IMG/VR virus record: IMGVR_UViG_3300033143_006101
Span: 62,001 to 126,000 of that record
Direction: 5' to 3' (one strand)
Length of the DNA: 64,000 bases
A program made the translations under genes and the position numbers. Below the pieces are notes generated by a model. That model did not search any database and was not told the DNA's origin. It worked only from the letters and a program-made list of their open reading frames with translations. This document shows positions 27,114-45,920 of this stretch, piece after piece (within the stretch, counting starts at the first letter, position 1; the number at the start of each line of letters is the position of its first letter).

Positions 27114-28274
27114 GTTCCTTTATATATCTTACTATTCTCCAGGCATATATATATATATATACCAAGTTAACCAAAATTCTGTAAGAGACATTATATGCCA
27201 TAATCCATTACAACAATGAAGTGAATACTCTAAAGGACAACCATCACAATAAGCACTCATACCTTGTAATTCTGTCGAATATTTTAGTGAATATTTTTGA
27301 CAATATACACAATGATCACCACCCCAGTCTTCTTCTATTGCATTAACCATGGTAGATCTATTTACTTGTCCGAAAAACCATCGCTTTCTAACAAAAACCA
27401 TCATCCTCTTATAGTGTTTAATAGTCTCCGCTTTCACTTCTTCTTGGGTTATTCCTGTTCCCACTTCTTTACCTTAGTCTCAGTAATAAATGCACTCACA
27501 AATGTATTAATAGCTAACTCCCGGATATCCTCAGTCCAAGGTACATCCTCTAACTCTACCCAATTAGAAACAAATCGTCTAGCAGATAATCTATCATAAT
27601 ACTGGACCACGTTCCACTTATGCCTTTTAGTTTTCCTTTCCTCAATTACATATCTATCAAGCCACAATATATTCCTGCTATACCAAAAAATATATATTTC
27701 CCGGGAAAGATCTTTTTCATTATAATAAACTCGAATATGATCCATTTAATACTCCTTTATATCATCCCAAGCACTAAGAAGAAAAGTGAGTTCTACTGTA
27801 CCTTCTATCTGCATGAGTAACCATGGATCAGCTGTCTCTTGTTTATTAGCAATATCTGATACAAAATATTCCCGCTTAAGATTTTTTAAAGGAAATTTAC
27901 CATATGTTATTTTTTCCTCAAATTTCTGTAAATGTTTCAGTACTTTGGTGGGTATCTCCTTGGTCCAGTCTTTCAGTAGTAGTATTTTTTTTAATACAAA
28001 AGTTTTATTATTAAGGATAACTTCAGTATTAGTATAATCACAACTATACATAATTTTTTGCTTGAGCAGGACTTGCAGTCTTCAAAAATTGAATCAACTT
28101 CTCATCACAATAAGTCTTTACAAAAGCTTGGAGAATATCTGCCGTCCCTTCCTGTTGATTCGTGAACAACAATAACTCATTCATGGGTATAGCTACCTCA
28201 CCTCCGGATCCAACCTCAGCACCAGTCTCACTAACTGTTCGCATTGTATTATCATCATCTAGTATATGCATATC

Positions 28275-28499
28275 TTACCTCCTAATTTTTGGGACTTTTC
28301 TTGGATTTTTTGGAATACAATTAATCGGCCTACCCCTATATTCCCTGAGAGTTAAAGTCAGTAAATCATCCTTTAACGTATAGTTATACATCCTGTAATT
28401 TACACAAGTAGTACCAGTTTCTTCCTTATTAATAGCCGATGAAGGATTGCAAGACACTATACAAATAAATAATATCCATAAAAATGTGGGTTTACGCAT
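28275..28499 (-). CDS. Small putative lipoprotein
   Basis: MRKPTFLWILFICIVS-C lipobox-like signal. Confidence 0.5.
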   Translation of the reverse strand: MRKPTFLWILFICIVSCNPSSAINKEETGTTCVNYRMYNYTLKDDLLTLTLREYRGRPINCIPKNPRKVPKIRR

Positions 28500-28535
28500 G
28501 TTCGCATCTCCAATATTTTGTATATTTATGTCCCC

Positions 28536-28564
28536 AATATAATCATACGCCTATTAGATGTCAA
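28536..28564 (-). promoter_or_regulatory. Sigma70-type promoter
   Basis: Minus strand TTGACA-17-TATATT, upstream of the 28499 gene. Confidence 0.65.
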
Positions 28565-28653
28565 TAGTTTTTTCACGAGACATAAAAAAAGAGAGTTTTT
28601 CAACTCTCTTCTATATATAAGTATGGATCCAAAGTTATTCATCTTCCATGATT

Positions 28654-28950
28654 TCACCTCCTCTTAGCCTCCAAGCAGTCTAATACCCACTGTAACCGAT
28701 TAACACTAATCTCCCCCTTAAACCACTCATCCCGGGGATACCGATTACACTTATCATAACCAAGCTTTAAGAGCTCAGCACGCACACTCTTCTCTACTTC
28801 CTTAGATACTACCTTAAATATACCAACCATAGAAACATAACTACTATGCGTCTTGTAATGCTTAATCCTGGCATGCGGGTCCTTGGAATAACCTACCTTA
28901 AACCTATCTCTATCTACTACTAAATATATATACATTTCTCGCTCAATCAT
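28654..28950 (-). CDS. GIY-YIG-like (T5orf172/MUG113) protein
   Basis: YIYLV...FKVGYSKDP..RI...E...EWF. Confidence 0.7.
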   Translation of the reverse strand: MIEREMYIYLVVDRDRFKVGYSKDPHARIKHYKTHSSYVSMVGIFKVVSKEVEKSVRAELLKLGYDKCNRYPRDEWFKGEISVNRLQWVLDCLEAKRR

Positions 28951-29175
28951 TAAAAACAATCCTTCCCATTCGTAACCCACTCAATATATTAAATCGGTCA
29001 AACCTGGTTAAACTTTTAGTAACTTTTGCCGATAACACTCCTAACATCCGATTTAAATCAATAGTACCACTATCTAATTTCCAAAATATCTCATCTGAAG
29101 CTAACTCAATCTCACGACCTACTAAGTTATCTACAGTCACACCCTTCAAATTAGCAAACGGTATAATCTTAGGCA

Positions 29176-29454
29176 TTACTCCACCTTAATCTTTAAATTC
29201 CAGTTCTCCTTCATCACCGTATATAATGTACAGGATAATGTGGAAATCTGTGTCTCTGTAAATTTTAAACCACAATCAATATTAATCGCATGTATTACCT
29301 CATGCAATATAGTTTCTTCCTTGATCTCCCTGGTAGTATCCTTTTCTATCCGTATAATATTATACCTTGTAAGTAACTCCCCAATAGTATGATCATCATC
29401 ATATAAATCCTTAACAAACTTAACCTTATACTTCTTGCCAAGTATATCTATCAT
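29176..29454 (-). CDS. HEXXH metallopeptidase-like protein
   Basis: ETILHEVIHAI. Confidence 0.65.
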   Translation of the reverse strand: MIDILGKKYKVKFVKDLYDDDHTIGELLTRYNIIRIEKDTTREIKEETILHEVIHAINIDCGLKFTETQISTLSCTLYTVMKENWNLKIKVE

Positions 29455-30553
29455 ACTCCTACTCTATAAATCCATCTTCAGGATCAGGCTTCGCACCCTT
29501 AAATATAGGCTTCCACCACTCACATGAATGCATGGGCTTAACATAACCTATACCACTATTCTTATCTACACATCTACTCTTAGCACTATAATATGAAGCA
29601 CACGTCTTACATTCCTTATCCTTCATATACATCCTCTCCTTATTAAAATTCAGCACATTGTACTCTATGTACAAGACCACGTAAACATGGTACCCACTCA
29701 TCTAACCCCGTGTCTTCTGTCCTATACATTAACTTATTATCTATACACTTCAACCTCTCGCTAGATACCTCATCACACTTGTAATTCTCTTGTGTCAATG
29801 GACGCTTAGCAGGTCTCTCCACCATCAATATCTGCAATATAATAAAACATATCAATAGTTTCAGTCTAATATCATACCTCCAATGCTCGCCTATTCCATA
29901 TACTTATATGTCTCCTACAAAAGTATCTTCCTTCATATAAGTCTTAGCTATCAATACTTGCAAATCAGTAACTGGTTTTCCATGATATATTAATGTACTA
30001 TCCTCTGTCTCTAATGTATCAACAACTTCATTATAATATTTATAAAAACGTGCGTTAGGATCTTCTTTATTTATTATCTCTATCGCTGCATCATAAGCTT
30101 CCCTTAGAGTAAGATAAGGCATCCTATCAAATTCCTTATCACCTTGAAGATTCGATATAATTACTTCATACCTTTCTCTTGACCCTCCAGCACTCCTAAT
30201 CAAACCATCTAAATTCTTAATTTTCTTAATATCCATACCACTTCTTCCAGTTATCAATAGATAAATAATATGAATTTTTTTCCATTCTTTAAGATTTTTT
30301 TCCAATAATAACCCAAAAAGCTACTAAATGTGCACTATAAAAGATAGAGACCAGGAGGCGAAATTCACCCCCTGAAATATACCAAGGAGAAGAACTATGA
30401 CCTATATCAAACAAAATAACAAAGGTAACTGGGAAACATGGGTTAATAACTACACACAAGTGACGAGATACCTACCTATATCATACATGTCTCGTCACTC
30501 ATTACGACATAACAGTCCAGTAGTACTATCCGCTGCGGGTTATGTAATTTTAT

Positions 30554-30610
30554 AAAAAATTATTAATTTTTTATAAAATTATTAATTTTTTATAAAATTA
30601 ATAATTTTTT
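30554..30610. repeat. Three tandem 19-bp units, each containing AAAATT-N3-AATTTT (operator-like)
   Basis: Units at 30554-30572, 30573-30591 and 30592-30610, ending 2 bp before the -35 hexamer. Confidence 0.75.
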
Positions 30611-30612
30611 AC

Positions 30613-30641
30613 TTGACGATCAGAATAAATTTGTATATACT
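30613..30641 (+). promoter_or_regulatory. Sigma70-type promoter of the RHH/RAMP island
   Basis: TTGACG-17-TATACT. Confidence 0.7.
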
Positions 30642-30672
30642 TATACATACAGGATAAAAAGGAAAATTACAA

Positions 30673-30834
30673 ATGAAAAAAAGATTTTATTATAATGTAG
30701 CTTGCCCCACAAAAAAAGAACGAGATAATTTAAGACAATCAGTTAAAATTCTGGCAGCAAGATTAGGGGTCAATATATGGCAAGCAATAAAAATTGCTGT
30801 AGAAACTTTTAAATATAAAAAGGAAGATAAATGA
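30673..30834 (+). CDS. Small ribbon-helix-helix-like regulator (53 aa, not in the ORF track)
   Basis: MKKRFYYNVACPTKKERDNLRQSVKILAARLGVNIWQAIKIAVETFKYKKEDK shows a strand-helix-G-helix pattern; ATGA overlap with the next gene. Confidence 0.5.
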   Translation: MKKRFYYNVACPTKKERDNLRQSVKILAARLGVNIWQAIKIAVETFKYKKEDK

Positions 30835-31475
30835 AAAATTCAAGGCAACTTAGAAAAGATTTTAAAAACGTAGGTATCCATATAAAACGATGGGAATTTA
30901 AAGAAGAAAGTACTTTTAAAAAGAGAGCAAAATCTAAAAAAATAAGTGAAAATAAATGTATTATTGAATTTTATAATTTACAAGCAGAAATACACTCAGA
31001 AACACCACGAGATATAGCTAAAGCTCTCATTAATAAATATGATAATGGTGATATTAATACTCTTCATAAATTATTAACTATGGATAAAAATAAAGGCCAT
31101 CTTACTAATTTAACAAGAGAAATATCACAAATAAATAGTGATATTGTAATGATTCCTGTATATCATATTAAATCTCCAGCAAAAGAAATAACATCTCTTA
31201 AAGTTAAACATTTAACCGTGAAACATAATACTACAAATATACAAACACATATTCCAGAGGAAATACCAAGAAATCAAAGTTTAGCAGATCTGATAATGCA
31301 ACCAGATATATTAGCATTACATTATATAAAATTTGCCAAAGGAATTATATCAAGATGTCAAAAAGGTTTAGAATTTAAAGCTATAGAATATGATGTAGAG
31401 AAAATTATTGATATATTACAAAAGATTATAAATACATATATGCCCCAAGTAGAAGAACTTAAAAATAAGCATTAA
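30831..31475 (+). CDS. Accessory protein of the RAMP-like locus (function unknown)
   Basis: 214 aa, translationally coupled to the RHH-like gene. TPRDI...LH.L..D..KG pattern recalls proteins I associate with neighbours of this phage RAMP-like family (unverified). Confidence 0.5.
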   Translation: MKNSRQLRKDFKNVGIHIKRWEFKEESTFKKRAKSKKISENKCIIEFYNLQAEIHSETPRDIAKALINKYDNGDINTLHKLLTMDKNKGHLTNLTREISQINSDIVMIPVYHIKSPAKEITSLKVKHLTVKHNTTNIQTHIPEEIPRNQSLADLIMQPDILALHYIKFAKGIISRCQKGLEFKAIEYDVEKIIDILQKIINTYMPQVEELKNKH

Positions 31476-31512
31476 GTTTAATTTTAAAATATTAGATAAA
31501 AGAGAGGACACC

Positions 31513-32295
31513 ATGACAACAAAAAAAACCAAGAAAAAGAAAAAGAAAACAGTAGTAGAAGTAGGTAAAGAATTGATGGACCAAGGAGGTCCCATTCTAG
31601 AAAACCTTGAAGAAGTCCACATAGATCCATTGGAATCTTTTTCTCTTATAGAATTTGAGTTAGGAGCTATCGGTTCTAAAGAAGTATTACAAAATAAAAT
31701 GCACGATGTACTTCTTGAAAAAAGAAGAGAAGAGTTTGAAAAGGAGGAAGATGAATAAAAAAAGGGATATGATAAAAAAAATCCGGATGTAGATTGTTTT
31801 GTAACAGCTCATTGGATTGATCCTAAAAACAAAAAAGTAGGTTTTCCAGCAATAGCTTTTAAAAAATCTTTTGTAATAGCAGCCCGTAATATTTTCGGTC
31901 CTAAAAGTAAAATGAAAACAGCTTTAGATAATGCTATTTTTGTAGTACCAACAGCAAGCCGAGGTCTTATCCCTGTAGATTATAAAAAATACAGCAATAG
32001 TATAGAACTCGGTAATCTTGGTGGACAGAAAAATAAACTATGCCCTTTCTATAGAGCAAAGTTTTCTGATTGGAACTGTAAAGTATTAGTTGTATTCGAT
32101 GAAGATGTAATCTCGTCTCGTCAATTAGTAAAAGCCGTATTAAAAGCAGGAATCTTTGGTGGTATCGGTGCATGGAGAGCAGCAAAATCAGGAACTTACG
32201 GAACCTATACAATAACAAAAATAGGCAGTCAGAGAGTAAGAGAATTGGTTAAATATACCATATCAAAAATAGATTGGGCACAATATATAATTTAA
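31513..32295 (+). pseudogene. Cas7/RAMP-like phage protein; one reading frame interrupted by a single in-frame TAA at 31756-31758
   Basis: Track ORFs 31513..31758 and 31912..32295 share a frame, which stays open after the TAA (KKGYDKKNPDVDCFVTAHWIDPKNKKVGFPAIAFKKSFVIAA). RAMP-like elements: IEFELG...LQN (beta1), GFPAxAFK helix, RAKFSDW.CKV.VVFD, and G-rich loop AGIFGGIGAWRAAKSGTYG. Confidence 0.72.
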
Positions 32296-32303
32296 CATAT
32301 AAA

Positions 32304-32570
32304 TGGATTGAACCTTAAGCGGTTTTCTTGATTCACTATCAGGCAATCCGAATTAGATAAAAGATTAGATTAGCTTAGCCAAGAATAGACCAGAGCAGAA
32401 AAGACAAGACGAGTCGGGCAGAATCTACAGCGATTATTAAGGTTCATTACCTTACTGCCCAAATTAGATAAAAGACTAGAATAGATCAGACTAGAATAGC
32501 AAAGAGCAGACTAGATTAGAACAGGAGCAGAACCTATAAGAGGTTATTGAGATTCACTATCTCACTACTC
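32304..32570 (+). ncRNA. Structured non-coding array: three tRNA-like cloverleaf units alternating with two (AGA-NN)10 tracts
   Basis: Units at 32304-32350, 32416-32460 and 32525-32570 share the same geometry with compensatory base changes. Tracts at 32351-32415 and 32461-32524 have strict 5-nt periodicity. Confidence 0.8.
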
Positions 32571-32683
32571 AAATTAAATTCCTCCTTCCCAACCCCAGCT
32601 TGCTCTTAGCTCACATGTGGACCCATAGCTACTTTTATAAGAATGTACTTGACAATTAGTACATATATATATAATAGTCATTT

Positions 32684-32878
32684 ATGGATAAATTTGATTT
32701 CGATAGAAGAAACAATAACCTCAAGTTAGCAAACAAAATAATGGACTACCTGGAAGATTGCCACATATCTGAATGGGAAGAAGGATTCTTAGAAGATATA
32801 CAACAACAACTCTAGTTCCCCTTCTTTACACTATCCGACGCTCAGAAAGATAAACTAGACACTATCCTGGATAAATAA
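32684..32878 (+). pseudogene. Small ORF interrupted by an in-frame TAG (32813-32815)
   Basis: MDKF...HISEWEEGFLEDIQQQL*FPFFTLSDAQKDKLDTILDK. The two parts together fit the small phage helical pattern SEWExxF....LSxxQxxKLxxI. Confidence 0.5.
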
Positions 32879-33151
32879 CCTTCACTCACCTCGTATGGTA
32901 TTTACATATCCTCAAATAAACGCTCCCACATCTCCCACTCCTCATCATCTATCTCCGGAATACCTTCAAAGAACATGTCTATTAGTAACTCCTCACAATC
33001 ATCCCAATCCAATACCTCACGCCTCCTGAAAAACTTCCTCAACCTCTCAAACATATCACTACCTCCTATCAGTCTTACTCTATATAAACGTAAAACTACC
33101 CCAAACCATGAACCAAAATAAACCCTCAACCTACCCCCAACTTGCCCCTGG

Positions 33152-33208
33152 CTCACTCCTAACTCGCGTATTACCCCCTCTCACTCCTAATTCACTCCTA
33201 ACTCGCGT
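33152..33208. repeat. Short direct repeats tcactcctaa(ctcgcgt)
   Basis: Copies start at 33153, 33181 and 33192. Confidence 0.7.
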
Positions 33209-33368
33209 GTGAACCGGTGTAATTAACTATGGATCCATAGTTACTTTATAAAATTATTAATTCTATTTCCAGCAAAAAATTAGTCTCACAGACAAGAGAG
33301 GCTGGGTACCCACCCGTCACCACCGGTGGTCAGATGTTGAAAGGGGTACATTATAGACCACCCTCAAT

Positions 33369-33473
33369 AATTGACCATCATCAAAAGTTGACCGGACTAC
33401 AATTGACCATCATCAAAAGTTGACTAGGCAATGACTGACCACACGGGATTATGTCCCCTGTCAAAAGTTGACC
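33369..33473. repeat. Iteron-like 24-bp direct repeats
   Basis: aattgaccatcatcaaaagttgac at 33369-33392 and 33401-33424; partial tcaaaagttgacc at 33461-33473. Confidence 0.8.
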
Positions 33474-33507
33474 TACTCAAATTTTTATGGAATAAAAGCC
33501 CAAAACT

Positions 33508-33751
33508 GTCAGTTTTTCGGAATTCCCAATACTCGGTGCAAGCTCGTCACAGGGATGGATGTCCTAGAGTTTGAGTCTGGTAAAGCAGTAATACCAGCAT
33601 AGACAGATATAGCTAATCATTAGACATATCTGTCTATGCTGGTGTTGGACTGAACAGATTTCCGGCTTTTGTCGGTTTTTCGGAATTTCCAATACTTGCA
33701 TCCAGTCAGTCTGGTTTGATAGATTGACTGCCTTATTGAGGATGGATGTCC
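33508..33751. repeat. Imperfect duplication bracketing a 15-bp-stem hairpin
   Basis: gtc(a/g)gtttttcggaatt(c/t)ccaatact at 33508 and 33671; ggatggatgtcc at 33553 and 33740; hairpin at 33596-33640. Confidence 0.7.
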
Positions 33752-34059
33752 AACAGGTAAGGTATAATAGCCCGATCTTGAAAGAGATCATAGCTGTTCT
33801 ATATGCGGGGTGAAAAGGTGCGAGAATTATGAACCGCACTATAGACTAATGATAGAGACATAGTTCTCTGTGGATTAAGACTTTCACTAACTATATATAG
33901 ACGAAGGTATGCGTCCACAAAGCCAACCTCCGGCTGAGGACTATAAACTATAGGGGGTGGGGTGATTAAGTTCACTTAAACGCCCCTCCTTTTCCCTGCC
34001 CATCCACCATGCATGTATTATGGTAGGGTGGTCAGAGATTGACCCCTTTGGAGGTTGTA

Positions 34060-34425
34060 ATGAGAAACAATTATTACAAGGAGTTTTTACAGGCTAACGG
34101 TTTGCTTTCTAAGTTTAATACTTGGAAGACAGAGCAGGTAGCAAAGAATCGGTATGACAAGATCAAGGATCAGGTTAAGTTTTATCATCTTGATTTTGAT
34201 CTGGAGAACGCATCTGTTGTGATCACTTTTGATCGTGCAGATCAGTATCCGACCGGAGATCATATTTGTTATAAAGATAACAATTGGTCTTTTGGTAGCA
34301 AGTCAACTGCTCAATCTATGAGTAAGGTTAAGACTGCTCATGGTGATTGCTATCCTATGCAAGATGCACTCCGCAAGTTGAAGTTCTTGCCTGTAGATAC
34401 AACTCACAAAGAATACCGTAGATAG
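34060..34425 (+). CDS. Hypothetical protein, first gene of the early-type block
   Basis: SD ggagg before ATG 34060. Confidence 0.6.
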   Translation: MRNNYYKEFLQANGLLSKFNTWKTEQVAKNRYDKIKDQVKFYHLDFDLENASVVITFDRADQYPTGDHICYKDNNWSFGSKSTAQSMSKVKTAHGDCYPMQDALRKLKFLPVDTTHKEYRR

Positions 34426-34978
34426 TTTAAGTGCATGGTGACCAAGTGAACTTGGTCACTGGCGTACCTAAATTTATGGAGGTTTAACATGAGAAACACA
34501 TTAGTTATAGGACACGATGAGAAGCATCATAAGGCTAACAAGTTTGGTCGTTGTAAGTCTAAGTGTATACCTAGTACATGCTTAGAATATAACAAGTGCC
34601 AGACAGAATTAAACAAGCCTATGGTTCGCAAGATACTTGGACTTGCGTAGTTACAGGATAGACTAAGTTAACTTGGTCTATCCCGTAATTAAATTAACTA
34701 TGGATCCATAGTTAAACTTATGGGTTCTGGAGGAAAGTATGAAGCTAACATAGATAAACTCTTGGCGATCATTACATGAGATAATGTATCATGGTGCAAG
34801 TCGTCAAGAGCTTATACATTATGTCAGGAGGTATTATGAACGGTAGGATTAGTGATGAAAGACTCCATGCTTATGTTCTTAAAGCATGGAGTAAGATGAA
34901 GAGAGGTTATAAGAAGTCCCGTTAATGGGATTTCTTATGAGCTTTTAGCTCATAATCTAATTTAGGAGGTGTTAACAC

Positions 34979-35146
34979 ATGTTAACATTAGAGATATTGC
35001 AAAAGAATCTTTTCTCAAAGGCAAAGACATTTAAGACTGGTTCAAAGGGTCACTATGTACACGGCAAGGTCGTGGACAAAGACGGCACTGTGTTTCAGAT
35101 GAATGCCAATGTCGTACAGATTGGTTCTAAACCGCAACCTAAATAA
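34979..35146 (+). CDS. Small phage protein (55 aa, not in the ORF track)
   Basis: MLTLE...AKTFKTGSKGHYVHGKV...FQMNANVVQIGSKP; SD aggagg. Confidence 0.6.
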   Translation: MLTLEILQKNLFSKAKTFKTGSKGHYVHGKVVDKDGTVFQMNANVVQIGSKPQPK

Positions 35147-36146
35147 TTAACTGCTGTTGCTTAGGCAGCTTGACTTGTCCTAAGCAACCAGGAGTTAACT
35201 AACTCAGGAGGTTAGAGATGAAAGACCAGATACTAAATGAAGTAGCATATGGTGTCGCTAAGTATGTTAAAGACAGACGAGCAGCAAGAGATCATCGTCA
35301 TCCTCTTGCCGGTTCTATTGTAGAACCTAGCCTCATTCCTCGTCGTACATATGCTCCACTCAATTCCATTGGCAACATCATCAAAGCCAAAGGACAGACC
35401 ATTGGAGTAAAGGTAGACACAGAGTAATTCCTTTAGCTTAGCTATGGGTTTAACTATGGATCCATAGCTAAGTCTAAGCACTTATTTAATAGGAGGTAAC
35501 ATGAAAACAAGAGTGTATTGTCACAAAACTCATGGATGGAAATCTGTTGACCAACTTGGGAATATCACTGATGCTCTCAATAAAAACAGGATGACTATCT
35601 CATGTAAACGGACAACTCATGTTAAGTAAAGAAGAACGTAAGAGACTACAGAATGCCATGAGGTATATCGACATGGCCAACGAGATAACAGATAATCTCG
35701 TGAAATCTGCAAGTAAAACCTACAAAGATTATGTCACCCGCAAGTAATTTAACTATGGATCCATAGATAACTATGGATCCATAGTAAAAATTAAAGGAGG
35801 TTATATGGACGGTAATTATGTCAGCATCAATCGTAGTGTAGTAACATGTAAGAAGCAGAAAGGTGAGAGAACAGCTATAGTACACAGGGGAGCATGTAAA
35901 CAGTGTCCCTTTCATCAAGACATAAGATGTCCAAACTAAATGTTATTCGATAGGATTATGACAGAACAAAACAAAAACCACAAAACAGATTATGATAGGT
36001 TAGTACGACTGTTAGAATCTATGGGAATGAGTACAGAACAAGCAAAACTCACCTCAAAAGACAGACTCAAACAATAAGGCATTATGTTATAGTTAACTGA
36101 TATCCTATAGTCAGGATATCAGCTTACTTTAAACCAGGAGGTACTT

Positions 36147-36659
36147 ATGAGTAATGCAACAGTAGTAAACGATTCAGTTAAGGAAGCTATGGGCAAGCTC
36201 CTCAAAGAGTTAGCATCAGTTGAGGAGAAACTTATAGGTAAAACCAGTAAGTATGATGCAAAGATCAATGTTCTGAAGGCTAAGAAGGTGAAGGAAACTA
36301 AGTCTCTGGTTGAAGAACTTGTTGGTATGCAGAAACATTTACTGGAACTTGCTGAATCATATGAGTTCGATGGTGATACTAAGACAGTAAGGTATGAGAT
36401 TGGTGATGTGTTTGCCAAGAAACTACCTGATACCTTGTTGATTCCTGATGTGGATGATACTATTGAGAAACTGGAAGAGCATGACTTCGATGATTGTATT
36501 AAGAAGGTTAAGACAATCGTTCGTAAGGCAGTAGAGAATCTGTCTGATGAAGATCAAGAAGAGTGTGGTATCTCAATTAACCCAGGTAAAGACAGGTATT
36601 ATTACAAAATCAACAGACTCAAAACCTCAACTGGACTCGTATTCCCTAAATCTGAGTAA
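36147..36659 (+). CDS. gam: Mu Gam-like host-nuclease inhibitor (DNA end-binding)
   Basis: N-terminal coiled coil, then KTVRY..G.V..KK.P..L.I.DVD..IE.L......I..K.I.RK.......GI.I..G.D.YY. Confidence 0.7.
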   Translation: MSNATVVNDSVKEAMGKLLKELASVEEKLIGKTSKYDAKINVLKAKKVKETKSLVEELVGMQKHLLELAESYEFDGDTKTVRYEIGDVFAKKLPDTLLIPDVDDTIEKLEEHDFDDCIKKVKTIVRKAVENLSDEDQEECGISINPGKDRYYYKINRLKTSTGLVFPKSE

Positions 36660-37207
36660 CACTGGAAGACTCCTTAGCAATAAGCCTAGGGAGTCTGTCA
36701 GTACTACGCAGATAGCTAGTACTACTATAAACCTCCCGCTGCCATCCCACATGTCCTAAATGAGAATTAACTATGGATCCATACTTGGACCACAGGAATA
36801 GTTAATCATGTGGGATGCGGGTGAGATGTTTCTAGTTATACGCATAGATATTAGTAATTTCACACATCATTACCCAAGTGTCTACCCAGCGATAGCCAAC
36901 ACCTTGTCCTACGTCCCATTGACTATATATGGCAAGTTGGGGCGTGGCTTGGGTGTGATTGGTGAGGTTATTGTCTGCCTCAAATTCTATACAGGAGGTA
37001 TTGCATGTCAGTTATAACAATTAAGTTTGAGGATCTCACTGAGAAGAAACAACAGGAGATACTAGAGGCTTATGAAATCGTGGATTACAAAGAAGTATTC
37101 CCATACGTACTGACTGAAATCTATGTCGAAGAGAATATAGACCTTATTACATCCTGTGAGGTTAAGCTACCGCCTTGTACACTATGTTCCTGTACAAAAT
37201 AATTATG

Positions 37208-37302
37208 TGGGAGAAGGCTGAGCGTAGTTTCAGCCTTCTCCCATAACACCGGACTACACTTGAGTAACACCGGACTACACTTGAGTAACACCGGACTACA
37301 CT
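37208..37302. repeat. 14-bp-stem hairpin followed by 21-bp tandem repeats
   Basis: tgggagaaggctga/tcagccttctccca, then taacaccggactacacttgag at 37244 and 37265 and a partial copy at 37286. Confidence 0.85.
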
Positions 37303-37545
37303 GGAATGTGTATTTAAGGGCTAATTTGGGCATGATATGTGTTACGGTTTGTGTAATGTGGTGTAATACGTGTCACGAATTGGATAATCGTGTTAAAGAG
37401 AGGATGTGTAATACAAAAAGAACACAAAGGCATACAATTTATATAAAGGTGACATAATTTGTCCCTTACTACAGAAAGAACACAAAGGCATACAATTGTG
37501 TTCTTTTATTGTAGACATATGGGAGAGGTTATGATAGGAGGTAGT

Positions 37546-37785
37546 ATGAAGATACCATTTAGTAAGATACATATTACATTTATACATATTGAATTAGTTC
37601 CTGACAAGTATTACATCAAGCCTATCAAGAAGCAGTTGAAGAAGTTAATGGCTGCAGGTCACAAGATACAGGCTATTAAAGTGTTACGTGATTTCAGTAA
37701 AGAGAATGGTCATCAACTAACATTGAGGGAATGCAAAGATTTTGTTGAGGATACCTTTCCATATCCTGAGACTGTTTATGTGTAG
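37546..37785 (+). CDS. Protein with ribosomal L7/L12 C-terminal-like domain
   Basis: GHKIQAIKVLRD...LTLRECKDFVE; SD aggagg before ATG 37546. Confidence 0.55.
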   Translation: MKIPFSKIHITFIHIELVPDKYYIKPIKKQLKKLMAAGHKIQAIKVLRDFSKENGHQLTLRECKDFVEDTFPYPETVYV

Positions 37786-39357
37786 ATGAGTTTAAGTATT
37801 CTCGGGTAAGTTCCTTGTGGAACTTATCGGAGAGTAATTAAGGAGTCGCATGAAGTATAGAGTATATTTATCGGAGACTACACATCAAAGTGTTATCGTT
37901 GAGGCAGACAGTGGTAAGGAAGCTGAGACTAAGGCACATGAGTGTATGTTTGAAGATGGTTTTAATTGGGATGGTAGAATGGAAACCAAGATACATGGTA
38001 ATGATGTTGTAGGTGAGCATGAGAATCTTGAACACTGTTTTGATTATATTAGTGAAGAGTTATGTGATGGCTGAGATACTTATATTTGTGCTTGTTGTGA
38101 TAGCAATAGCCTGGACTATATTTGAGGTAAGGATAGAGCGTCATTGTACTGGGTGTATTCATTATTATAAATGGAGTAACCCTTGTATTACGTGCAGGCA
38201 TCATTATAATCCTAAGGATAGGTCTTAGGGCTTATCCTTAGATTTATAAGGAGGTAAGTATGACAAAAGCAGTAGCTGAAACATTTACAACTAAAGACCT
38301 AACAAAAGCAGTTAAGGCAGCTCTTGTTGAGTGCAAAAATCCTTATGCCCAGACATATCTCAGGGCTATTCCATTATCAGCATTGGAGTATGGGAAGGAA
38401 GGAATACAAGTACAACTTTTGTATTGCCTTTCCAACATGCAGACATGGAGAGGAGAAACTGCAAGACAGTGTAAGAAAGTAATGAAATACTTTAGTAAGT
38501 AATAATGTTATACCTTGTCTTATGTAGAGACAGGGTATAAATTATTAAAATTGGAGGTAAGTATGAGAGTAATTAAGTTTCATCCTGGTGCTAACAAGAA
38601 GTATCAAGAAGCAAAGGAGAAGATAGCTGAGGTGGAGAAAGAACATCCTGAAATAGCTGAGAAGATGCTACTATCTTTTTATCAGATATGGGACAGGATG
38701 CTTACCATGCTTTTTAACGGTAATATTCCAAAGGATAAGTATGGTGAAGAGGAGAAGGATTACGAGTTACATATTGCAAGTGATTTTGTAGTTGGATCCT
38801 TTTCATTTGTTTATATGTATGATGAGAAGAGGGATTTCAATGGAGGAATAATACTTCATGGATTTGGTGAGACCTTTTCTGTTGAGTTGACTGCTCCTAG
38901 TCATCCACACTGGAGTATTCATACGTAGGATTATTAGCTCCCTGATAAGGGAGCTAGTAACTTTATGTTAGGAGGTTTAGATGGCTAAGAAAACAAGCAG
39001 GCGTAAGACTAGAGTAACACATAAGCATATTGGTATGTGTCCTAGATGTAAGAAGACTAAGGAGTTACATACTTTACGTGCGATGAAGGTCACTGGTTGT
39101 GCTGAATGTCTTTCTATATTTTTAGATGTGCTTGAGGAGGATCCATTACGATGAAGAAATTGATTAAGAGTAAGAAGGATATAGATCGGTACATTCAATC
39201 TGAATACGTTGATGATCTAGAATGGTCTACAATGGGGATACTTTATGTGAGACTGAACCAACAGAGTATCCTTGTGTGCTGGTTGATGAGACGCAAGTAG
39301 ATTATGAAAATTATGAATTGAATGTTAAGTTTAATTTTGTATATCCATCAGATTTTG

Positions 39358-39445
39358 TAGATTGAAGCCTGCTAATTGGTAGGCTTGAGTTTATTGAGTA
39401 AGCTGAGAGGTGTCAAACCCTAAACAGTATTGGAGGTAGTTATGA
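39358..39445 (+). repeat. ~88-bp intergenic element duplicated at 53669-53757
   Basis: Three differences over 88-89 bp; spans stop, hairpin, second small hairpin, SD and ATG. Confidence 0.9.
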
Positions 39446-41625
39446 CAGAGGTAATGGAGAAGATTGACTTCCCTTCTAACTTTAATGCAAATAACTATAA
39501 GCTTATTGCTACTGTGAAAACAGAGAAGGATGGCGGATATAGTAATGGGCAATTAAGATACAGTAAGGACAGGAATAAGTATGATGTAAAAGATGTTCCT
39601 TTATCTAGTGGACTTTATACTAATGGGTCATACTTATACAGAGTGATTGGTGAGTATAGTGAATTTTCCATTTATGTTTTTGAAAAGCAAGTATAATATA
39701 TCACCAGTAAGTTATATGTTTTCTGACATACTGGTGATATTATTAAGGAGGTACTATGAAGATTGCGAGTATAATAAATAGTGTAAGTCAAGTAACATCT
39801 GATGCTGTTGATGTGTTATCACATCCAGCCAAGTGTGTAAAACATGAGGTTAAAAAGGCGTATGCTTTTTATAAGATAATAAGTTCATAGTATTACACCT
39901 GAGGTGACTCACCTCAGGTGTAATATTATTTAACTGGAGGTAACAATGAGTACACAAATCAATGTTATAGTATTTGATAGAGATCAAGATACTATTATCG
40001 AAAACATTCTTGTGTTAGCACAAGGGGCTGATGACGCTGAACAAATCTTTTTAGATAAGTGTAGTGTTTACTTTACTAATTGGGATGAGTACACCGATGC
40101 AGACAAGGAGGCTATTTTAGATAATGGGTTTGAACAAAATTCCCACAAAATAGTATTCATTGGTTGGCCTGATGTTATAGACAAACGTAACTAAAATTTA
40201 GTTACTTGGAGGTAACAATGAGTGACTTTTTAACCTTTAGATCAAGAGCATTACAAGCACTTACTTTACTCAATTCAAAAGATCGTCCACGCTTTTCAAG
40301 CATGGAGGATAAAGAGAACTGGGTAAAAAAAGAATACACAAGACATTTCAAAAATGGAGTGTACAATTGCAAATAGGAACATTACAGAGAGATGGAACAG
40401 TAACTAACACAAGGATTATAAACCAGAACAATTTGACAGCAGAGTGCTGGTCTATACAGTTTCACGGTATAGAATACTGTGACACTTGTGAGTTCAAAGA
40501 CACCAGCAATTGTGGTGGAAAGAATATCCGCAAGACCCTGGCAAATGAGAAGGGTAACAAGATACCTTTATAGAAGGAGGTAGTATGAAAGCTAAGAGTA
40601 AAGCTAAGAAACAGAGAAAGAAACTCAAGGTGCTTCGATACTTTGAGGATACTTTGTATTAGATTGATGTCTGCCTTCGGGCAGTCATGAATTTATTCCA
40701 GGAGGTAATATGAATTGTTTACATTGTGCATCATCCAATGTTACTGAAGTATGTAAGGAGACTCTTTTAGTTTATCGAGATCCTGATACTGATGAGGATC
40801 TTGGTGGCAGTGAACTTCTTGAGAAAGAAACTTTACATTACTATTGTTATGATTGTGAAAAGAAATTTGATCCGGAAGATTAATATTCAGGAGGTTGTAT
40901 GAGTAATATGGATCCTAGCTTTTATGAGTTTGAGTATGATAGAAAAGTAACTGTGTATCTAGTTAGAGGTACTCGCATTATACAAACTAGAGTACACGAG
41001 AGACAAGCTATATTTGATGAGGATAAAAAAGGTAACACTTCGCTAAGAAGATATTACTTTGTCAAACTTCCTCATCGTAATGGTCAACTTTCACGACAAA
41101 AGATATCTGAGGATAGATTATATCCCACAGAGAAAGACGCGAGACTAAGTACTAGCATCACAGTAGAAGTAGTAAAGTAATATCAGATGAGTCCTAAGTT
41201 AGGACTCTTCCGAGTTTATTCCAGGAGGTAGTTATGTATATATATAAACAGAGTGAGCCACAATTATATACTGTAGGATTTTATTCTCCGGATGATAATA
41301 AGTGGCATCCAGAGAGTGATCATTCATCAAGTGAGGAAGCTGCAAAGCGTGTTGCTTGGTTGAATGGATCCGGTAAGGCGTGATAAGTTTTCATTTGCAG
41401 TTGGCTACGATAATTGTAGTCAATCGCAAAGTAAACCTAAGGAGGTTAAGTATGCCAAACAGATATCACATAGGTAAAGGTGGAGTTACAAAGAACCAAT
41501 ATGGGATAGAGTATGAGCATAGTCCTAAAGAAGTGAAGCGATTAAGAAAACATCGTAAGACTAAATACGATGCGAGAAAACCACAGATAGTATGTGTAGA
41601 CATTAAGAAGTAGAAGGAGGTAAGT

Positions 41626-42081
41626 GTGAGTAAGTATACACAGTTACATGACTCAATTACCAAAAATATAGAAAAGCATGGTTGGAATATCATCTTTGTT
41701 TTCTCACCTGAAGGAGAAGAAGGTATTGCCTATGCTTATACTATAGGAATGAGACAGACTTGTGATCATCCTGATTTAATATTATCTGGGTTACCATATG
41801 AAACTGCAGGAATAATCTTAAATCATATTGGTAAAGATATTAAGGAAGGTTTACAACTAACACACGGTGAAGAGCTACCTGGATATCTTGGTGACAATTA
41901 CAAGATAAAGGTGGTTAAGGTAGATGTTTTAAAATATCAACAGGTTATCCTACAATGCATGAATTACTATGAGGACAGAGACGTTGATCCTAGAGACATA
42001 GAATTCTTTCAGATAGTATGGCCTGATAAAGATGGGGAGTATGATACAACCCATCCTAAATTGCAAGATTTATTTATGTAA
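41626..42081 (+). CDS. DUF4262-like protein
   Basis: IEKHGWNIIFV...YAYTIGM...HPDLI.SGL...QIVWPDKDG.Y. Confidence 0.8.
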   Translation: MSKYTQLHDSITKNIEKHGWNIIFVFSPEGEEGIAYAYTIGMRQTCDHPDLILSGLPYETAGIILNHIGKDIKEGLQLTHGEELPGYLGDNYKIKVVKVDVLKYQQVILQCMNYYEDRDVDPRDIEFFQIVWPDKDGEYDTTHPKLQDLFM

Positions 42082-43409
42082 TAAATTAAGCTTGTTCTCT
42101 GAAGAACAGGCTCAATTTATTATAGGAGGTAGTGGATGTTATTAATAGTAATCTTTATCAGTTTAATTATAATAGGCATAGTTCTTCGTGTGAATAATAA
42201 ACAGCTTGAACCTTTACACACATTAGGAGAGGTTATTTGGATGTTGTTTATAATATTGTTAGCAATCTTGTTGATTGCACTACCATTTATACGGTATGGT
42301 TTTAAGACAGATGTGATAGCACATCAGGAGATGTTGAATACTGTTGACGACTATCGTAAGAGTGGAGATAATATTGAAAGAGTTGCGGTTGCTACAACTA
42401 TTATAGAACAGAATAGTAAGATAGCATGGATACAATTCTTAGAAAAGGATTGGCCTTTCCTTTTTGATATATTTATACCTGATGAGTACATGGTAATAAC
42501 ACCTATACGTATAAACGAGTAAACTGATGCTTGCCTTCGGGTAAGCATGAATTTATTCAGGAGGTATCATGGGAGATAAAAGTACGACGACTAGAAAATT
42601 TACAGGCAAAGTCAGAGAGACTAAAGATTCTTATGTAGTAGAAGAAAAGACTGGTCCGAACTCTATACATATGCATGAACCAGGATATTCAATAGATGAA
42701 GAATTATCACACTTTGATGGTAAGAATATAAAGGTAAAACTTATCATAGAAATAGAAGAGATTGAATAAGGTTTAAGCTTGGGCTAACCCAAGCTTAAGT
42801 TTTATAGGAGGTAGTTATGTCTAACTATAACAAGTATTACAAAGAGATTAGTGAATGGAATTGGGACGATATTGTACATTCTGCAAGAGCTAATCCTCAT
42901 GAAGATGATGATGATAACATCAAAGGGTATGAGCTTCTAGGTACTGTTATGTGCCTAGCACCGAGTAGAAAATATTATACTCCTATTGCTTGTTCCAATG
43001 TAACAGAGGAAGAAGCCAACGAAGACGCGGAGTATATGAAAGCTCTTGAGAAAATTGCTGAAGAATATGGTGGCTGGATTGAAGAAGGCCAGGGAGATCC
43101 ATGTAATGTATTATTTGTCTTAATGATTGTAGATAGTAGCTGGAAGGATTTGGTATATGAACCAGATACTTTTACTGAGAGCTACAAAGTATGGTATAAA
43201 GATAGTGAATATTCTGTACTTATTACTAATGATCCTGAGAATAAACCAGAAACAATAACTGTTTTTAAAGACGGGAAACAGTTAGAGTGGCATGATCCTG
43301 AAGGGGATGAAGTCTACACAGCATTTATTAAGAACAGATATAACAAGGTGACAATATAACTTGATGCTTGTCCCGTTGGACAGGCATGAATTTATTTAAG
43401 GAGGCAACA

Positions 43410-43760
43410 ATGAAGAATTATGCGTCAGTAACTGTTGAAGGTTTTATTGTAAAGGACTTGGAACTTAATAAGACCAAGTCAGATAAGAGTGTGGTACACT
43501 TTACCATAGCAGTTAATCATTATTCTAGAGACAAGGATAATCCTAAGGTATCTTTTATAGATATCGATGCATGGAATAATCTTGCTAAGCAATGCCATGA
43601 ACATTGTGGCAAAGGTTCAAGAGTAATGGTGATTGGTGAGTTACGCCAGGATAGATGGGAAGGACAGGATGGCAAGATGAGATCAAAGGTTAAGGTTGTT
43701 GCATCTGATGTTCGTTTTCTGTCAGTCAAAGCACCTGCACACAAAGTTAAGTCTGCATGA
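43410..43760 (+). CDS. ssb: Single-stranded DNA-binding protein without acidic C-terminal tail
   Basis: VTVEGFIVKDLEL..T.S...V.HFTIAVN...FID.DAWNNLA.....GKGSRV.V.GELRQDRWE..DG..RSKVKVVA..V.FL. Confidence 0.92.
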   Translation: MKNYASVTVEGFIVKDLELNKTKSDKSVVHFTIAVNHYSRDKDNPKVSFIDIDAWNNLAKQCHEHCGKGSRVMVIGELRQDRWEGQDGKMRSKVKVVASDVRFLSVKAPAHKVKSA

Positions 43761-44488
43761 TGACTTACAGGAATCCTTAATAGGATTCCCGCATGTTATT
43801 ATAGGAGGTATTAATGTCTAGAGATAACAATAGAACTGTCCGTTATGGCACAGCTGTATCATCTATGTGTTTAACAATGGACATATTAAACAAAGAGAAT
43901 AAGGTATCAGCTTTTACTGCATCTTTAATCATAGGCAACATTTTTAATTATCCTAAAGAGGAAGTGTTTAATGATATTATTGATTGTAGAAAAGCAATGA
44001 TAGAATTAAAAAGATAACTGTTTGCCTAGCACTTACAGAGTGTTGGGTTAATTATTATAGGAGGTACTATGAAGTATTTTAAATGCTATGAAACATGTAT
44101 AGCGGATGACGATTTCTTACATTTCTATACACCGGATGAAGCATTACAATTCGTTAAAGATTTCTTCTTTCCGGAGGACACATCTTACCATAAAGACTAT
44201 GTTGATAAATACGATCAACAACCTCATGAAGCATATGAAGATAGTGTAATTGAATCTGAAAAGACAAAATCAGATTTACCTATCAATTGTTTTATAGATG
44301 CATGTCTACTTATTTATGGTTTTGATGTAACATTAGTAGACTTGGATAGAGAACCATACCACATGTATAGAAGAAATAAGAATACAGATATGTGGATGAT
44401 GGAGAATCCAGATGAGTAGAATACTTAAGCCAGTTCTATTATAGAATTGGCTTAAGTCTTTTAGCATATTTTATTAAGGAGGTATTTT

Positions 44489-45583
44489 ATGCAAAGTACA
44501 TACGGTACTTTAGCTGAGTTCGCACAGGACATCGAGCAATTAGATGCTAAGAAAAATGATGTGATAGCTTGCAACAACAGCTACCGCATGGTTGGTGATG
44601 ATTCAATAGAAATCGATGGAGAACATGGTGGTGTGTTTCCATTATCTAACAATGCCGCGTCACAAGTAGCAACGTATTTGGACATACCATACAAATATTG
44701 GAAGAAGATTTTAGACATACCTGATCTTCTAACTACCAATATCAATGCCTTGTTACAGGCTAAACCGGAAGAGAAGCGTTTCCTGAGAACATGGAAAGAT
44801 CCAGAAGGGAACGAAGAGAATAGGATGAGAGCATTGCTCAGTGATTCCTATCGTCCTTATGACCATGCTCTTTATCTCTCTGCTGCATTTCCAGTATTGA
44901 GAGAGTTCCCTAACATTGAGGTTAAGAGTTATGCTCTTACCGAAGCCCGCTTCTATCTTCAAGCAGTATTCCCAACACTTACTGCTGAGATTCGACCTGG
45001 CGAAACAGTAGCTAAAGGAGTAACTTTTCGTAACTCTGAAATAGGGAGAGGTTACTATGATATCTTGGACATGGTCTGGGAATATATATGTAGTAACGGT
45101 ATGATTGGTGAATCTATTCTTCGTAAGAGACACGTTGGATCCAAACTTGATATTGATGGTGAGGATGTAAGTGTCTATGCAGATGAGACTATTGAAGCCG
45201 ACATCACTGCTCTGTCTCTTAAGATAAGAGATACATTGACAGCCGCATTAAGTGAAGCTGCATTCGACCAACAGTTGAGTGTGCTTAAAGAAGCTGCAGA
45301 AGATGATTTCTCTAAGAGGAAGTCTAAGCAGATTGTTACTAATGTAACCAAGAAGTATTCTTTCCTGAGTGAAGATGATGGGGAGATGATTCGAGATAAT
45401 CTGGTAGGCAAAGGTGATTTCTCTCGCTATGGTTTGATGAGTGCCATTACTGCTCTTGCTCATGAGATAGATGATCGTGACAAGCAGTATGATCTGGAAC
45501 GAACAGGTCATAAGATAATAACTCTCAATCCTTCCGAATGGAAAGTTATTAAGGAGACTAAAATTAAGACTAAGGCTGCATAA
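44489..45583 (+). CDS. DUF932-family phage protein
   Basis: RALLSDSYRPYD, FRNSEIG.G, CSNGMI. Confidence 0.7.
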   Translation: MQSTYGTLAEFAQDIEQLDAKKNDVIACNNSYRMVGDDSIEIDGEHGGVFPLSNNAASQVATYLDIPYKYWKKILDIPDLLTTNINALLQAKPEEKRFLRTWKDPEGNEENRMRALLSDSYRPYDHALYLSAAFPVLREFPNIEVKSYALTEARFYLQAVFPTLTAEIRPGETVAKGVTFRNSEIGRGYYDILDMVWEYICSNGMIGESILRKRHVGSKLDIDGEDVSVYADETIEADITALSLKIRDTLTAALSEAAFDQQLSVLKEAAEDDFSKRKSKQIVTNVTKKYSFLSEDDGEMIRDNLVGKGDFSRYGLMSAITALAHEIDDRDKQYDLERTGHKIITLNPSEWKVIKETKIKTKAA

Positions 45584-45920
45584 GACCTTGGATAGCTGGC
45601 TACTTTGGTAGCCAGTGTTCCAATGTTTTAATAGGAGGTAAGTATGGGAACTAGAACTGCAAGAGTTGTCGTACTATTTAGATATCATTCTCATTTGAAA
45701 AAGCGAGTAGAAGTTCCAGCTGAATTAGATGATACAGCAGGCAAGAAGTACGCTGAGAAATCAGTACTCGATCTATTAAAGAAAGCTGATCCTAAACAGG
45801 TGGAACATATTGTTTCTATTGTAGCATATGATATAGATAAGAGAAAAGAAGAAGATGATACTGGTTTGCACTAAATTTAGAGAGTAAAGCAGAGGGAATC
45901 GAACCTTTTAAGGAGGGAGA

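What the first reader, a model, noticed from the sequence alone, without database searches (positions are those of the whole stretch)
31741..31792. Single in-frame TAA splits the RAMP-like gene at an internal SD and A-run
Seen: ...GAG GAA GAT GAA TAA AAA AAG GGA... The frame continues with family-like sequence, so an AAA-to-TAA change would explain it. The same spot has AAGGAGG(31741)-ATG(31751) in the +1 frame, running over A7 into an AGG codon and stopping after 13 codons; a -1 slip there would enter the C-terminal frame. Inference, with alternatives: sequencing error, recent inactivation (e.g. to escape self-targeting), or a regulated split/readthrough gene.
Basis: partly seen in the sequence, partly recalled or inferred. 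Interest (0 to 1): 0.6.

Follow-up and report, generated by a model that had tools for sequence, protein, structure and literature searches.

The report
Premature stop in a phage vipr gene
A giant phage carries a recently described RNA-guided silencing system (VIPR) whose guide-RNA array looks intact but whose single protein gene is cut by one real TAA stop codon. This is most likely a recent loss-of-function allele rather than a programmed recoding device.

Summary
TAA at 31756-31758 ends an 81-codon ORF (31513-31758). The same frame stays open for 178 more codons, to 32295.

The "RAMP-like gene" is a vipr gene, the Cas7-like protein of the VIPR systems described in 2026 preprints. A family profile crosses the stop (E 8.9e-45) and matches the solved SUSP1 Vipr (E 8.4e-18).

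Directly downstream lie two vrRNA-like units. Each has 10-11 period-5 repeats (AG-N-NN instead of GGY-NN) and a three-helix tail with strong covariation.

The only ortholog, in a distantly related jumbo phage, is one intact 247-aa ORF that aligns collinearly across the stop. It has no SD, ATG or A-run at that site.

The TAA is identical in a second, independently assembled sample, so random error is unlikely. TAA is the phage's main stop, and none of its 25 tRNAs is a suppressor. The internal SD-ATG spacing of 3 nt matches none of 47 real starts in the genome, and no stimulatory hairpin was found. No self-target was found.

Best reading: a recent nonsense allele producing a VIPR-null phage that keeps its guides. 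Split or frameshift expression stays possible but unsupported.

The parts
30831..31475 (+). 214-aa gene directly upstream of vipr; candidate accessory (vap-like) gene by synteny only
   Evidence: The ortholog (208 aa, 42-43% identity) sits directly upstream of the intact vipr in the related phage. No Pfam or PHROG hit. No similarity to SUSP1 vap1. The AF2 model is unusable, pLDDT 42.5.
31513..31758 (+). vipr N-terminal piece: an 81-codon ORF ending at the TAA. It encodes a Lys-rich tail, RRM strand beta1 and the first helix of the alpha-bundle.
   Evidence: 42% identity to residues 3-71 of the intact ortholog P0002. The family profile match begins at 31642. Secondary structure was mapped from the AF2 model of P0002 and from alignment A3.
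31756..31758 (+). The in-frame TAA (codon 82)
   Evidence: It aligns with Ile72 of P0002, in the loop at residues 68-80 between two helices, and near Leu35 of SUSP1 Vipr. It is present in two independent assemblies.
31759..32295 (+). vipr C-terminal continuation: 178 open codons in the same frame. It encodes helix-1, the thumb Arg (YR) and the G-loop GIGAWR. The first in-frame ATG/GTG/TTG is at 31912.
   Evidence: 56% identity to P0002. phrog_4652, E 2e-10. The profile match runs to 32232. ORF list.
31741..31792 (+). Internal AAGGAGG (31741-47), ATG (31751), A7 run (31757-63), AGG (31763-65) and a 13-codon ORF in the +1 frame ending at TAG 31790-92
   Evidence: Sequence. The 3-nt spacing is atypical for this genome. 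Absent from the ortholog. No significant downstream hairpin, z -0.89.
32305..32349 (+). Leading copy of the structured vrRNA tail element (outer stem GGATTG/CAATCC)
   Evidence: Alignment A4, covariation, covariance model R1 at 59.6 bits.
32350..32460 (+). vrRNA-like unit 1: 5' motif AATTAGATAAA, then 10-11 pentamers AG-N-NN (32362-32416), then a three-helix tail (32416-32460)
32461..32570 (+). vrRNA-like unit 2: the same 5' motif, then 10-11 pentamers AG-N-NN (32473-32527), then the tail (32525-32570; one mismatch in the outer stem)

Best explanation
The window comes from a complete 252,876-bp jumbo phage. Positions 30831-32570 hold a VIPR locus (Viral Interference Programmable Repeat). It consists of a conserved upstream gene, one vipr gene (a Cas7-like RAMP that in SUSP1 polymerises on a guide RNA, one protomer per 5-nt repeat) and an array of two vrRNA-like guides.

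A point nonsense mutation has put TAA at codon 82 of vipr. That position lies in a poorly conserved, Lys/Glu-rich loop of the alpha-helical bundle. Translation from ATG 31513 should therefore stop after 81 residues: basic tail, RRM strand beta1 and one bundle helix. The remainder holds helix-1, the thumb and the G-loop, the main RNA-binding surfaces in the SUSP1 structures. It has no in-frame start before Met134 and no good ribosome-binding site there. So the phage most likely makes no functional Vipr and is VIPR-null by point mutation.

The event is recent. The downstream 178 codons are still open, all family-invariant residues are kept, and the array is pristine.

Shown here: the stop, its reproducibility, the family membership, the array and its tail structure, and the intact ortholog. 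Inferred: loss of function, recency, and the idea that the retained guides are either not yet decayed or still useful with a Vipr supplied by a co-infecting relative, as described for VIPR-null 'solo vrRNA' phages.
For: - **Stop and frame:**
- **Independent assembly:** a second sample's contig is identical over 4108 bases.
- **Ortholog:** P0002 is intact, 247 aa, and aligns collinearly across the stop at 50% identity.
- **Family membership:** the profile spans the stop at E 8.9e-45, and this is the only vipr in the genome. The profile matches PDB 36pp 'SUSP1 Vipr protein' at E 8.4e-18. The AF2 model of the ortholog (pLDDT 87.5) matches Cas7-type RAMPs (Csm3, Cmr4, type VII) as its top Foldseek hits. 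The family has 1443 representatives whose alignments start about 40 residues before the stop position.
- **No recoding of TAA:** TAA ends 147 of 240 long ORFs. No stop reassignment opens the region. None of the 25 tRNAs is a suppressor.
- **Internal start is weak:** SD-ATG spacing is 3 nt against 4-10 nt at 47 real starts, and 32 of 79 AAGGAGG motifs are not starts, including one at 31583 in the same gene. The ortholog's DNA has no SD, ATG or A7 there and the same length, so there is no compensated frameshift.
- **Array intact:** 22 of 22 pentamers begin with AG. The tail helices are 96.9% paired, with compensatory changes at 12 of 16 pairs and 0 of 500 shuffles reaching the observed score.
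- **Divergence:** vipr (50%) has diverged like the rest of the two genomes (median 47.6% over 115 shared ORFs), so the gene was kept for a long time before the stop.
- **Precedent:** VIPR-null phages that keep solo vrRNAs are documented (10.64898/2026.10.15.759431, section 8).
Against: - Raw reads could not be examined. The two assemblies come from sister samples and may sample one population.
- Only one ortholog exists, at 50% identity, so recency cannot be dated. Purifying selection on the C-terminal part cannot be told apart from lack of time to decay.
- The stop lies in a surface loop between secondary-structure elements, which is where a split or a readthrough residue would be tolerated.
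- A perfect AAGGAGG plus an ATG overlapping the stop (ATGAATAA), one base out of frame across an A7 run, is an odd coincidence.
- The array shows no decay.
Confidence: 0.62

Rival explanations
1. Two-piece Vipr. The N piece (81 aa) terminates at TAA. Ribosomes start, or restart by coupling, at ATG 31751 behind AAGGAGG. A fraction then slip -1 on AAA-AAA with the AGG codon waiting in the A site, or RNA polymerase adds an A in the A7 run. That gives a C piece beginning MNKKKGYDKK, and the two pieces reassemble into an RRM. Vipr dosage would then be set by slippage.
For: - The geometry is exact.
- AAGGAGG is this phage's usual ribosome-binding site: 47 of 79 copies precede ORF starts.
- The 3' end of the SD lies about 12 nt before the AAA in the P site. 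From general knowledge of dnaX-type sites, that distance is in the range where an upstream SD stimulates -1 shifts.
- The break is in a low-confidence loop between helices.
- The C-terminal frame and the array are undamaged.
- A 152-aa C-terminal-only Vipr-like ORF starting near the same loop exists on another contig.
Against: - The 3-nt spacing is outside the range of all 47 real starts.
- The heptamer is not a canonical X XXY YYZ in the ATG frame.
- No downstream stimulatory structure: z -0.89, and the hairpin begins 17 nt away.
- The ortholog is unsplit and lacks every one of these features.
- No standalone N-piece relatives were found.
- A7 runs are common in this genome, 204 in total.
- Both assemblies give A7, not A8.
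Confidence: 0.13
2. Leaky readthrough. A small fraction of ribosomes read UAA-A with a near-cognate tRNA (for example the phage's own tRNA-Lys UUU) or a host ochre suppressor. This makes a little full-length Vipr, which is tolerated because the position is a variable loop.
For: - The frame is exactly preserved and the loop position is variable (Ile in the ortholog).
- The phage encodes tRNA-Lys(ttt).
- The stop is followed by A. From general knowledge, UAA-A is not the strongest termination context.
Against: - TAA is the phage's commonest genuine stop.
- No suppressor tRNA in the genome.
- No sign of recoding elsewhere in the genome.
- No conserved readthrough context in the ortholog.
- Basal UAA readthrough in bacteria is very low (general knowledge). 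Vipr acts as a filament of about ten protomers per guide (10.64898/2026.04.26.720927), so it needs stoichiometric amounts.
Confidence: 0.1
3. Artefact or minority allele. The true dominant phage sequence has a sense codon at 31756, and the TAA reflects a consensus error or a rare variant fixed by the assembler.
For: Reads could not be inspected. Both contigs come from one project's sister samples.
Against: Two separately assembled samples agree at every one of 4108 bases. A substitution at a T is not a homopolymer-length error. The rest of the genome shows no excess of broken genes.
Confidence: 0.07

Closest known systems
VIPR systems (Vipr protein plus vrRNA); reference Escherichia phage SUSP1. 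Preprints 10.64898/2026.04.26.720920 and 10.64898/2026.04.26.720927.
   Same: - Phage-borne minimal locus with no CRISPR array.
- Single small RAMP of about 200-250 aa with an RRM core, thumb Arg (YR) and G-loop GxGxWR.
- Profile match to the solved SUSP1 Vipr.
- Guide-like RNAs of about 110 nt made of 10-11 pentanucleotide repeats followed by a conserved structured 3' tail, arrayed directly next to vipr.
   Different: - The vipr ORF is broken by TAA.
- The repeats are AG-N-NN (W-G-N-NN in the ortholog), not GG-Y-NN. The paper does mention NNNNG-type variants.
- The G-loop has Ala where SUSP1 has Asp177, and Asn where SUSP1 has His17. Both residues contact G1 in SUSP1.
- The tail is a three-helix element rather than the SUSP1 pseudoknot.
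- There is no gene directly downstream of vipr. Instead a conserved 214-aa gene lies upstream, unrelated to vap1.
- The host is a jumbo phage.
- No target was found with the 1-nt skip rule.
VIPR-null phages with solo vrRNAs (10.64898/2026.10.15.759431)
   Same: A phage that lacks a working vipr but keeps vrRNAs in place. In that work the guides are proposed to use a competitor's Vipr.
   Different: In those phages vipr and vap1 were lost by a shared deletion of about 1.1-1.4 kb. Here the gene is complete except for one stop codon. No target in a rival vipr or vrRNA was found.
Cas7-family RAMPs of class 1 CRISPR effectors (Csm3, Cmr4, type VII Cas7)
   Same: Best structural matches of the ortholog's model (Foldseek E about 1e-6, probability 1.00). 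Backbone subunits that bind a guide at regular intervals.
   Different: About 10-12% sequence identity. No cas genes and no CRISPR repeats. Periodicity of 5 nt rather than 6 nt.
dnaX- and IS-type programmed -1 frameshift sites
   Same: An A-rich slippery run with an SD-like element about 10-14 nt upstream.
   Different: Wrong register for X XXY YYZ. No downstream hairpin. Not conserved. It would rescue only the C-terminal piece, from an internal start.

Membership tests
VIPR system | Vipr protein: RAMP homolog with RRM core, thumb and glycine-rich loop | tested here: met
   The profile of 51 family members matches PDB 36pp SUSP1 Vipr at E 8.4e-18. The profile matches the window at E 8.9e-45. 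The ortholog's model matches Cas7 RAMPs. YR and GIGAWR are conserved.
VIPR system | An intact, translatable vipr reading frame | tested here: not met
   TAA at codon 82 lies inside the conserved core. The next in-frame start is 52 codons later.
VIPR system | vrRNA: at least 4 tandem pentanucleotide repeats, GGY/NN or a related consensus | tested here: met
   Two tracts of 10-11 pentamers, 22 of 22 starting with AG. No YNNGG x4 anywhere in the genome, so this is a variant consensus. The same scan recovers the four published SUSP1 vrRNAs.
VIPR system | Conserved structured 3' tail after each repeat tract | tested here: met
   Three helices, 96.9% of cells paired, 12 of 16 pairs with compensatory changes, 0 of 500 shuffles as good. 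The covariance model finds only these copies.
VIPR system | Minimal non-CRISPR locus on a virus | tested here: met
   Complete 252,876-bp phage with terminal repeats. No Rfam CRISPR or other RNA family in the window.
VIPR system | Associated vap accessory gene | tested here: inconclusive
   The upstream 214-aa gene is syntenic in the one relative. It has no family, fold or vap1 similarity.
VIPR system | vrRNA expression, RNP formation and DNA targeting by the 1-nt skip rule | not testable with these tools
   No RNA runs were listed. Target searches were negative: own genome and related phage at the control level, and no exact match in viral contigs.
Programmed -1 ribosomal frameshift | Canonical slippery heptamer in the zero frame, a downstream stimulatory structure, and conservation in relatives | tested here: not met
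   In the ATG-31751 frame the heptamer is U AAA AAA. The downstream fold has z -0.89. The ortholog lacks the site.
Stop-codon reassignment or suppression | TAA avoided as a terminator, other genes interrupted by it, or a suppressor tRNA | tested here: not met
   TAA ends 61% of long ORFs. Treating TAA as sense merges neighbouring genes rather than repairing them. No tta anticodon among the 25 tRNAs.

The most novel reading that the evidence does not exclude
The stop is not a defect. It would be part of a device that expresses Vipr as two polypeptides, or in small regulated amounts. An N piece ends at TAA. A C piece starts at the overlapping AAGGAGG-ATG and is brought into frame by -1 slippage on A7 before a rare AGG. 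The result would be a naturally split, slippage-gated RAMP on a jumbo phage.
Probability: 0.1. Interest if true: 0.75.

Novelty: new member of a known kind. Interest (0 to 1): 0.42.

Why it matters
VIPR was described only in 2026 and is proposed to be older than CRISPR. This locus adds a jumbo-phage example with AG-type repeats and matching changes at the two protein positions that read the first G in SUSP1. That makes it a natural test case for how Vipr reads its repeat.

The nonsense allele would be a one-base route to the 'VIPR-null but guide-bearing' state, so far known only from deletions. If correct, it catches that transition early.

It also offers a simple experiment: changing the stop to a sense codon in a plasmid-borne copy of the locus should switch silencing on or off.

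For annotation, the two ORFs called here (81 aa and 127 aa) should be labelled as one disrupted vipr.

Tried and rejected
- **Alternative genetic codes.** Reading TGA, TAG or TAA as sense explains neither the site nor the short-ORF region. TAA is the main stop.
- **Suppressor tRNA.** None found. The odd tRNA-Asn(att) has a normal 7-nt anticodon loop and is not tta.
- **Reads.** No sequencing run was listed.
- **Closer relatives or other alleles.**
  - Phage GenBank collection, by DNA and by protein: none.
  - Viral and metagenome contigs by protein pattern: none.
  - DNA pattern with N at 31756 and a variable A-run in both collections: none.
  - The window's own records may have been left out of these searches.
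- **Standalone N-fragment relatives.** None found.
- **Self-targeting as a motive.**
  - Best self-match was 16/22, equal to the shuffled guides.
  - Cross-targeting between the two phages was at the control level for all six guides under three pairing rules.
  - No exact 1-nt-skip target for either guide in viral contigs.
- **Second vipr or extra vrRNAs in the genome.** None.
- **Upstream 214-aa gene.** The following all gave nothing usable:
  - Pfam and PHROGs
  - ESM Atlas
  - vap1 comparison
  - Word search
  - AF2, pLDDT 42.5
- **VIPR type I-VII assignment.** The held supplement has no per-type repeat logos or accession lists.
- **Complex prediction for the two pieces.** Not run.

Full report
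**1. What is in the sequence**

- AAGGAGG at 31741-31747 and ATG at 31751.
- TAA at 31756-31758, followed by an A7 run at 31757-31763.
- AGG at 31763-31765 in the ATG-31751 frame, and TAG at 31790-31792 after 13 sense codons.

The TAA ends an 81-codon ORF that starts at 31513. The same frame then runs open for 178 more codons, to the stop at 32293-32295. The first ATG, GTG or TTG in that frame after the TAA is at 31912.

**2. Where the window comes from**

The window is bases 62001-126000 of a 252,876-bp virus record with direct terminal repeats, rated complete.
- It carries 25 tRNAs, two DNA ligases and a Mu Gam-like gene.
- It uses the standard code. TAA ends 147 of 240 long ORFs, and no single stop reassignment opens the region.

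**3. The stop breaks one ancestral gene**

- A word search found one relative, P0002 (247 aa, intact). It comes from jumbo-phage contigs of up to about 235 kb, including a 217,703-bp IMG/VR record.
- P0002 aligns with the read-through translation over 249 columns at 50% identity. There is no gap at the stop, which faces Ile72.
- The gene directly upstream (214 aa) is also conserved, at 42-43% identity.
- The two phages share 115 ORFs with a median identity of 47.6%. The locus has therefore diverged like the rest of the genome.
- An exhaustive search with P0002 found 1443 family representatives of about 200 aa. Their alignments begin near P0002 residue 30, about 40 residues before the stop position.
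- A profile of 70 members matches window 31642-32232 at E 8.9e-45 with one TAA inside. It finds no second copy in the genome.

**4. What the gene is**

- Pfam has nothing, and PHROGs gives only an unnamed family.
- The family profile matches PDB 36pp, 'SUSP1 Vipr protein', at E 8.4e-18. P0002 alone matches at E 1e-6 over the thumb and G-loop.
- Three 2026 preprints describe VIPR. Vipr is a small Cas7-like RAMP on phages. One protomer binds each unit of a vrRNA made of 9-16 GGY/NN pentamers followed by a structured tail. The NN bases then pair with DNA, skipping every third base, and silence transcription.
- The AF2 model of P0002 (pLDDT 87.5) has Csm3, Cmr4 and type VII Cas7 as its best PDB matches.

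**5. The rest of the locus**

Directly after the gene lie three elements:
- A leading tail copy at 32305-32349.
- Two units of about 110 nt, at 32350-32460 and 32461-32570.
- Each unit has the motif AATTAGATAAA, then 10-11 pentamers that all begin with AG (22 of 22), then a 45-nt tail.

The related phage has four such units (16-20 pentamers, W-G-N-NN) followed by a terminator.

The six tails form three helices. Of all cells, 96.9% are paired, 12 of 16 pairs show compensatory changes, and none of 500 shuffles reaches the observed score. A covariance model finds only these copies in either genome.

No YNNGG x4 run exists anywhere in the genome. The same period-5 scan recovers the four published SUSP1 vrRNAs.

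This is therefore a variant repeat, AG instead of GG. The window protein and P0002 have Ala and Asn where SUSP1 has Asp177 and His17, the two residues reported to read G1. The link between those residues and the changed repeat base is an inference. The closest other family member (G-loop GSWR) also sits beside AG-period repeats.

**6. Where the stop falls in the protein**

The stop maps to the loop at P0002 residues 68-80, between bundle helix 55-67 and helix 81-87. That is near SUSP1 Leu35, just after Lys33.
- The N piece keeps strand beta1.
- The C piece keeps helix-1, the thumb Arg and the G-loop.

Neither piece alone is a complete RRM.

**7. Is the stop real?**

A 4.5-kb contig from a different metagenome sample is identical over 4108 bases, including the TAA and the A7 run. 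Reads were not available. Random error is therefore unlikely, though both samples belong to one project.

**8. Is it programmed?**

Against suppression:
- No suppressor tRNA was found.
- TAA is the main stop codon.
- There is no genome-wide pattern of interrupted genes.

Against an internal start with a -1 shift:
- Of 79 AAGGAGG motifs in the genome, 47 precede real ORF starts at spacings of 4-10 nt. None of those has the 3-nt spacing seen here.
- Another 32 motifs are not starts at all, including one at 31583 in this same gene.
- A7 runs number 204.
- The heptamer is out of register for a canonical slip site.
- The downstream fold is not better than shuffles, z -0.89.
- The ortholog's DNA reads GAA AAA GAA AAA AAT AAA ATC at this place. 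It has no SD, ATG or A7 and is the same length.
- No standalone N-piece relatives exist in the word index.

In favour:
- The coincidence of a perfect SD and an ATG overlapping the stop.
- The loop location of the break.
- The undamaged C-terminal frame and array.
- One C-terminal-only Vipr-like ORF on a 628-bp contig.

**9. Motive**

Neither guide matches the phage's own genome, or the related phage, above shuffled controls under the 1-nt skip rule or the alternatives tested. No exact target exists in the viral contig collection. Escape from self-targeting is not supported, and the targets remain unknown.

**10. Verdict**

The most likely reading is a genuine, recent nonsense allele of vipr in an otherwise intact VIPR locus (confidence 0.62). 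The phage would be VIPR-null while still carrying guides. That state is already documented, by deletion, in SUSP1-like phages, where solo vrRNAs are thought to use a rival's Vipr.

The rivals are split or frameshift expression (0.13), leaky readthrough (0.10) and artefact (0.07).

The locus is a new member of a known kind. The stop itself is ordinary unless experiments show recoding.

Noticed in passing
window 32362-32527; L005 6801-7318; L027 1763-1888: This Vipr clade uses period-5 repeats with AG (W-G) instead of GG. Its G-loop has Ala or Ser where SUSP1 has Asp177, and Asn where SUSP1 has His17. Both residues contact G1 in SUSP1. This may be a natural covariation between protein and repeat base.
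   Followed up: partly
window 33224, 34695, 35451, 35750, 35768, 36768: Six copies of the perfect palindrome TAACTATGGATCCATAGTTA lie between short ORFs. They may be operators or terminators of the early region.
   Followed up: no
window 32571-34038: A stretch of about 1.5 kb after the array has almost no long ORF. It holds several repeats:
- a 32-nt direct repeat at 33369 and 33401
- a 27-nt repeat at 33507 and 33670
- a 28-nt hairpin at 33590-33646
- CTCACTCCTAA repeats at 33135-33212
   Followed up: no
window 37237-37311: Three tandem copies of the 21-nt unit ACTTGAGTAACACCGGACTAC.
   Followed up: no
window 28000-48000: Coverage by ORFs of at least 100 aa falls to 30-44%. The region is filled with short ORFs that have strong AGGAGGT-N4-ATG sites. 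No alternative code lengthens them.
   Followed up: partly
G000 173028-173100 (outside the window): A tRNA called Asn with the unusual anticodon ATT and two mismatches in the acceptor stem. It is not a suppressor.
   Followed up: partly
L026 141-599: A 152-aa Vipr-like ORF lacks the N-terminal strand and starts near the loop where the window gene is broken. It sits on a 628-bp contig, and the sequence upstream is not Vipr-like.
   Followed up: partly
G000 174464, minus strand (outside the window): Another pair of long same-frame ORFs (95 and 272 codons) is separated by a single TAG, with no start for 46 codons after it.
   Followed up: no
L027 1254-1766; L029 3632-4132: Other family members have a gene of 166-170 aa directly downstream of vipr, as SUSP1 has vap1. 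The window and its ortholog have none there and instead share an upstream gene.
   Followed up: no
window 15954-17060 and 54099-55319: The window encodes both an NAD-dependent and an ATP-dependent DNA ligase. It also encodes a Mu Gam-like protein at 36147-36659.
   Followed up: no
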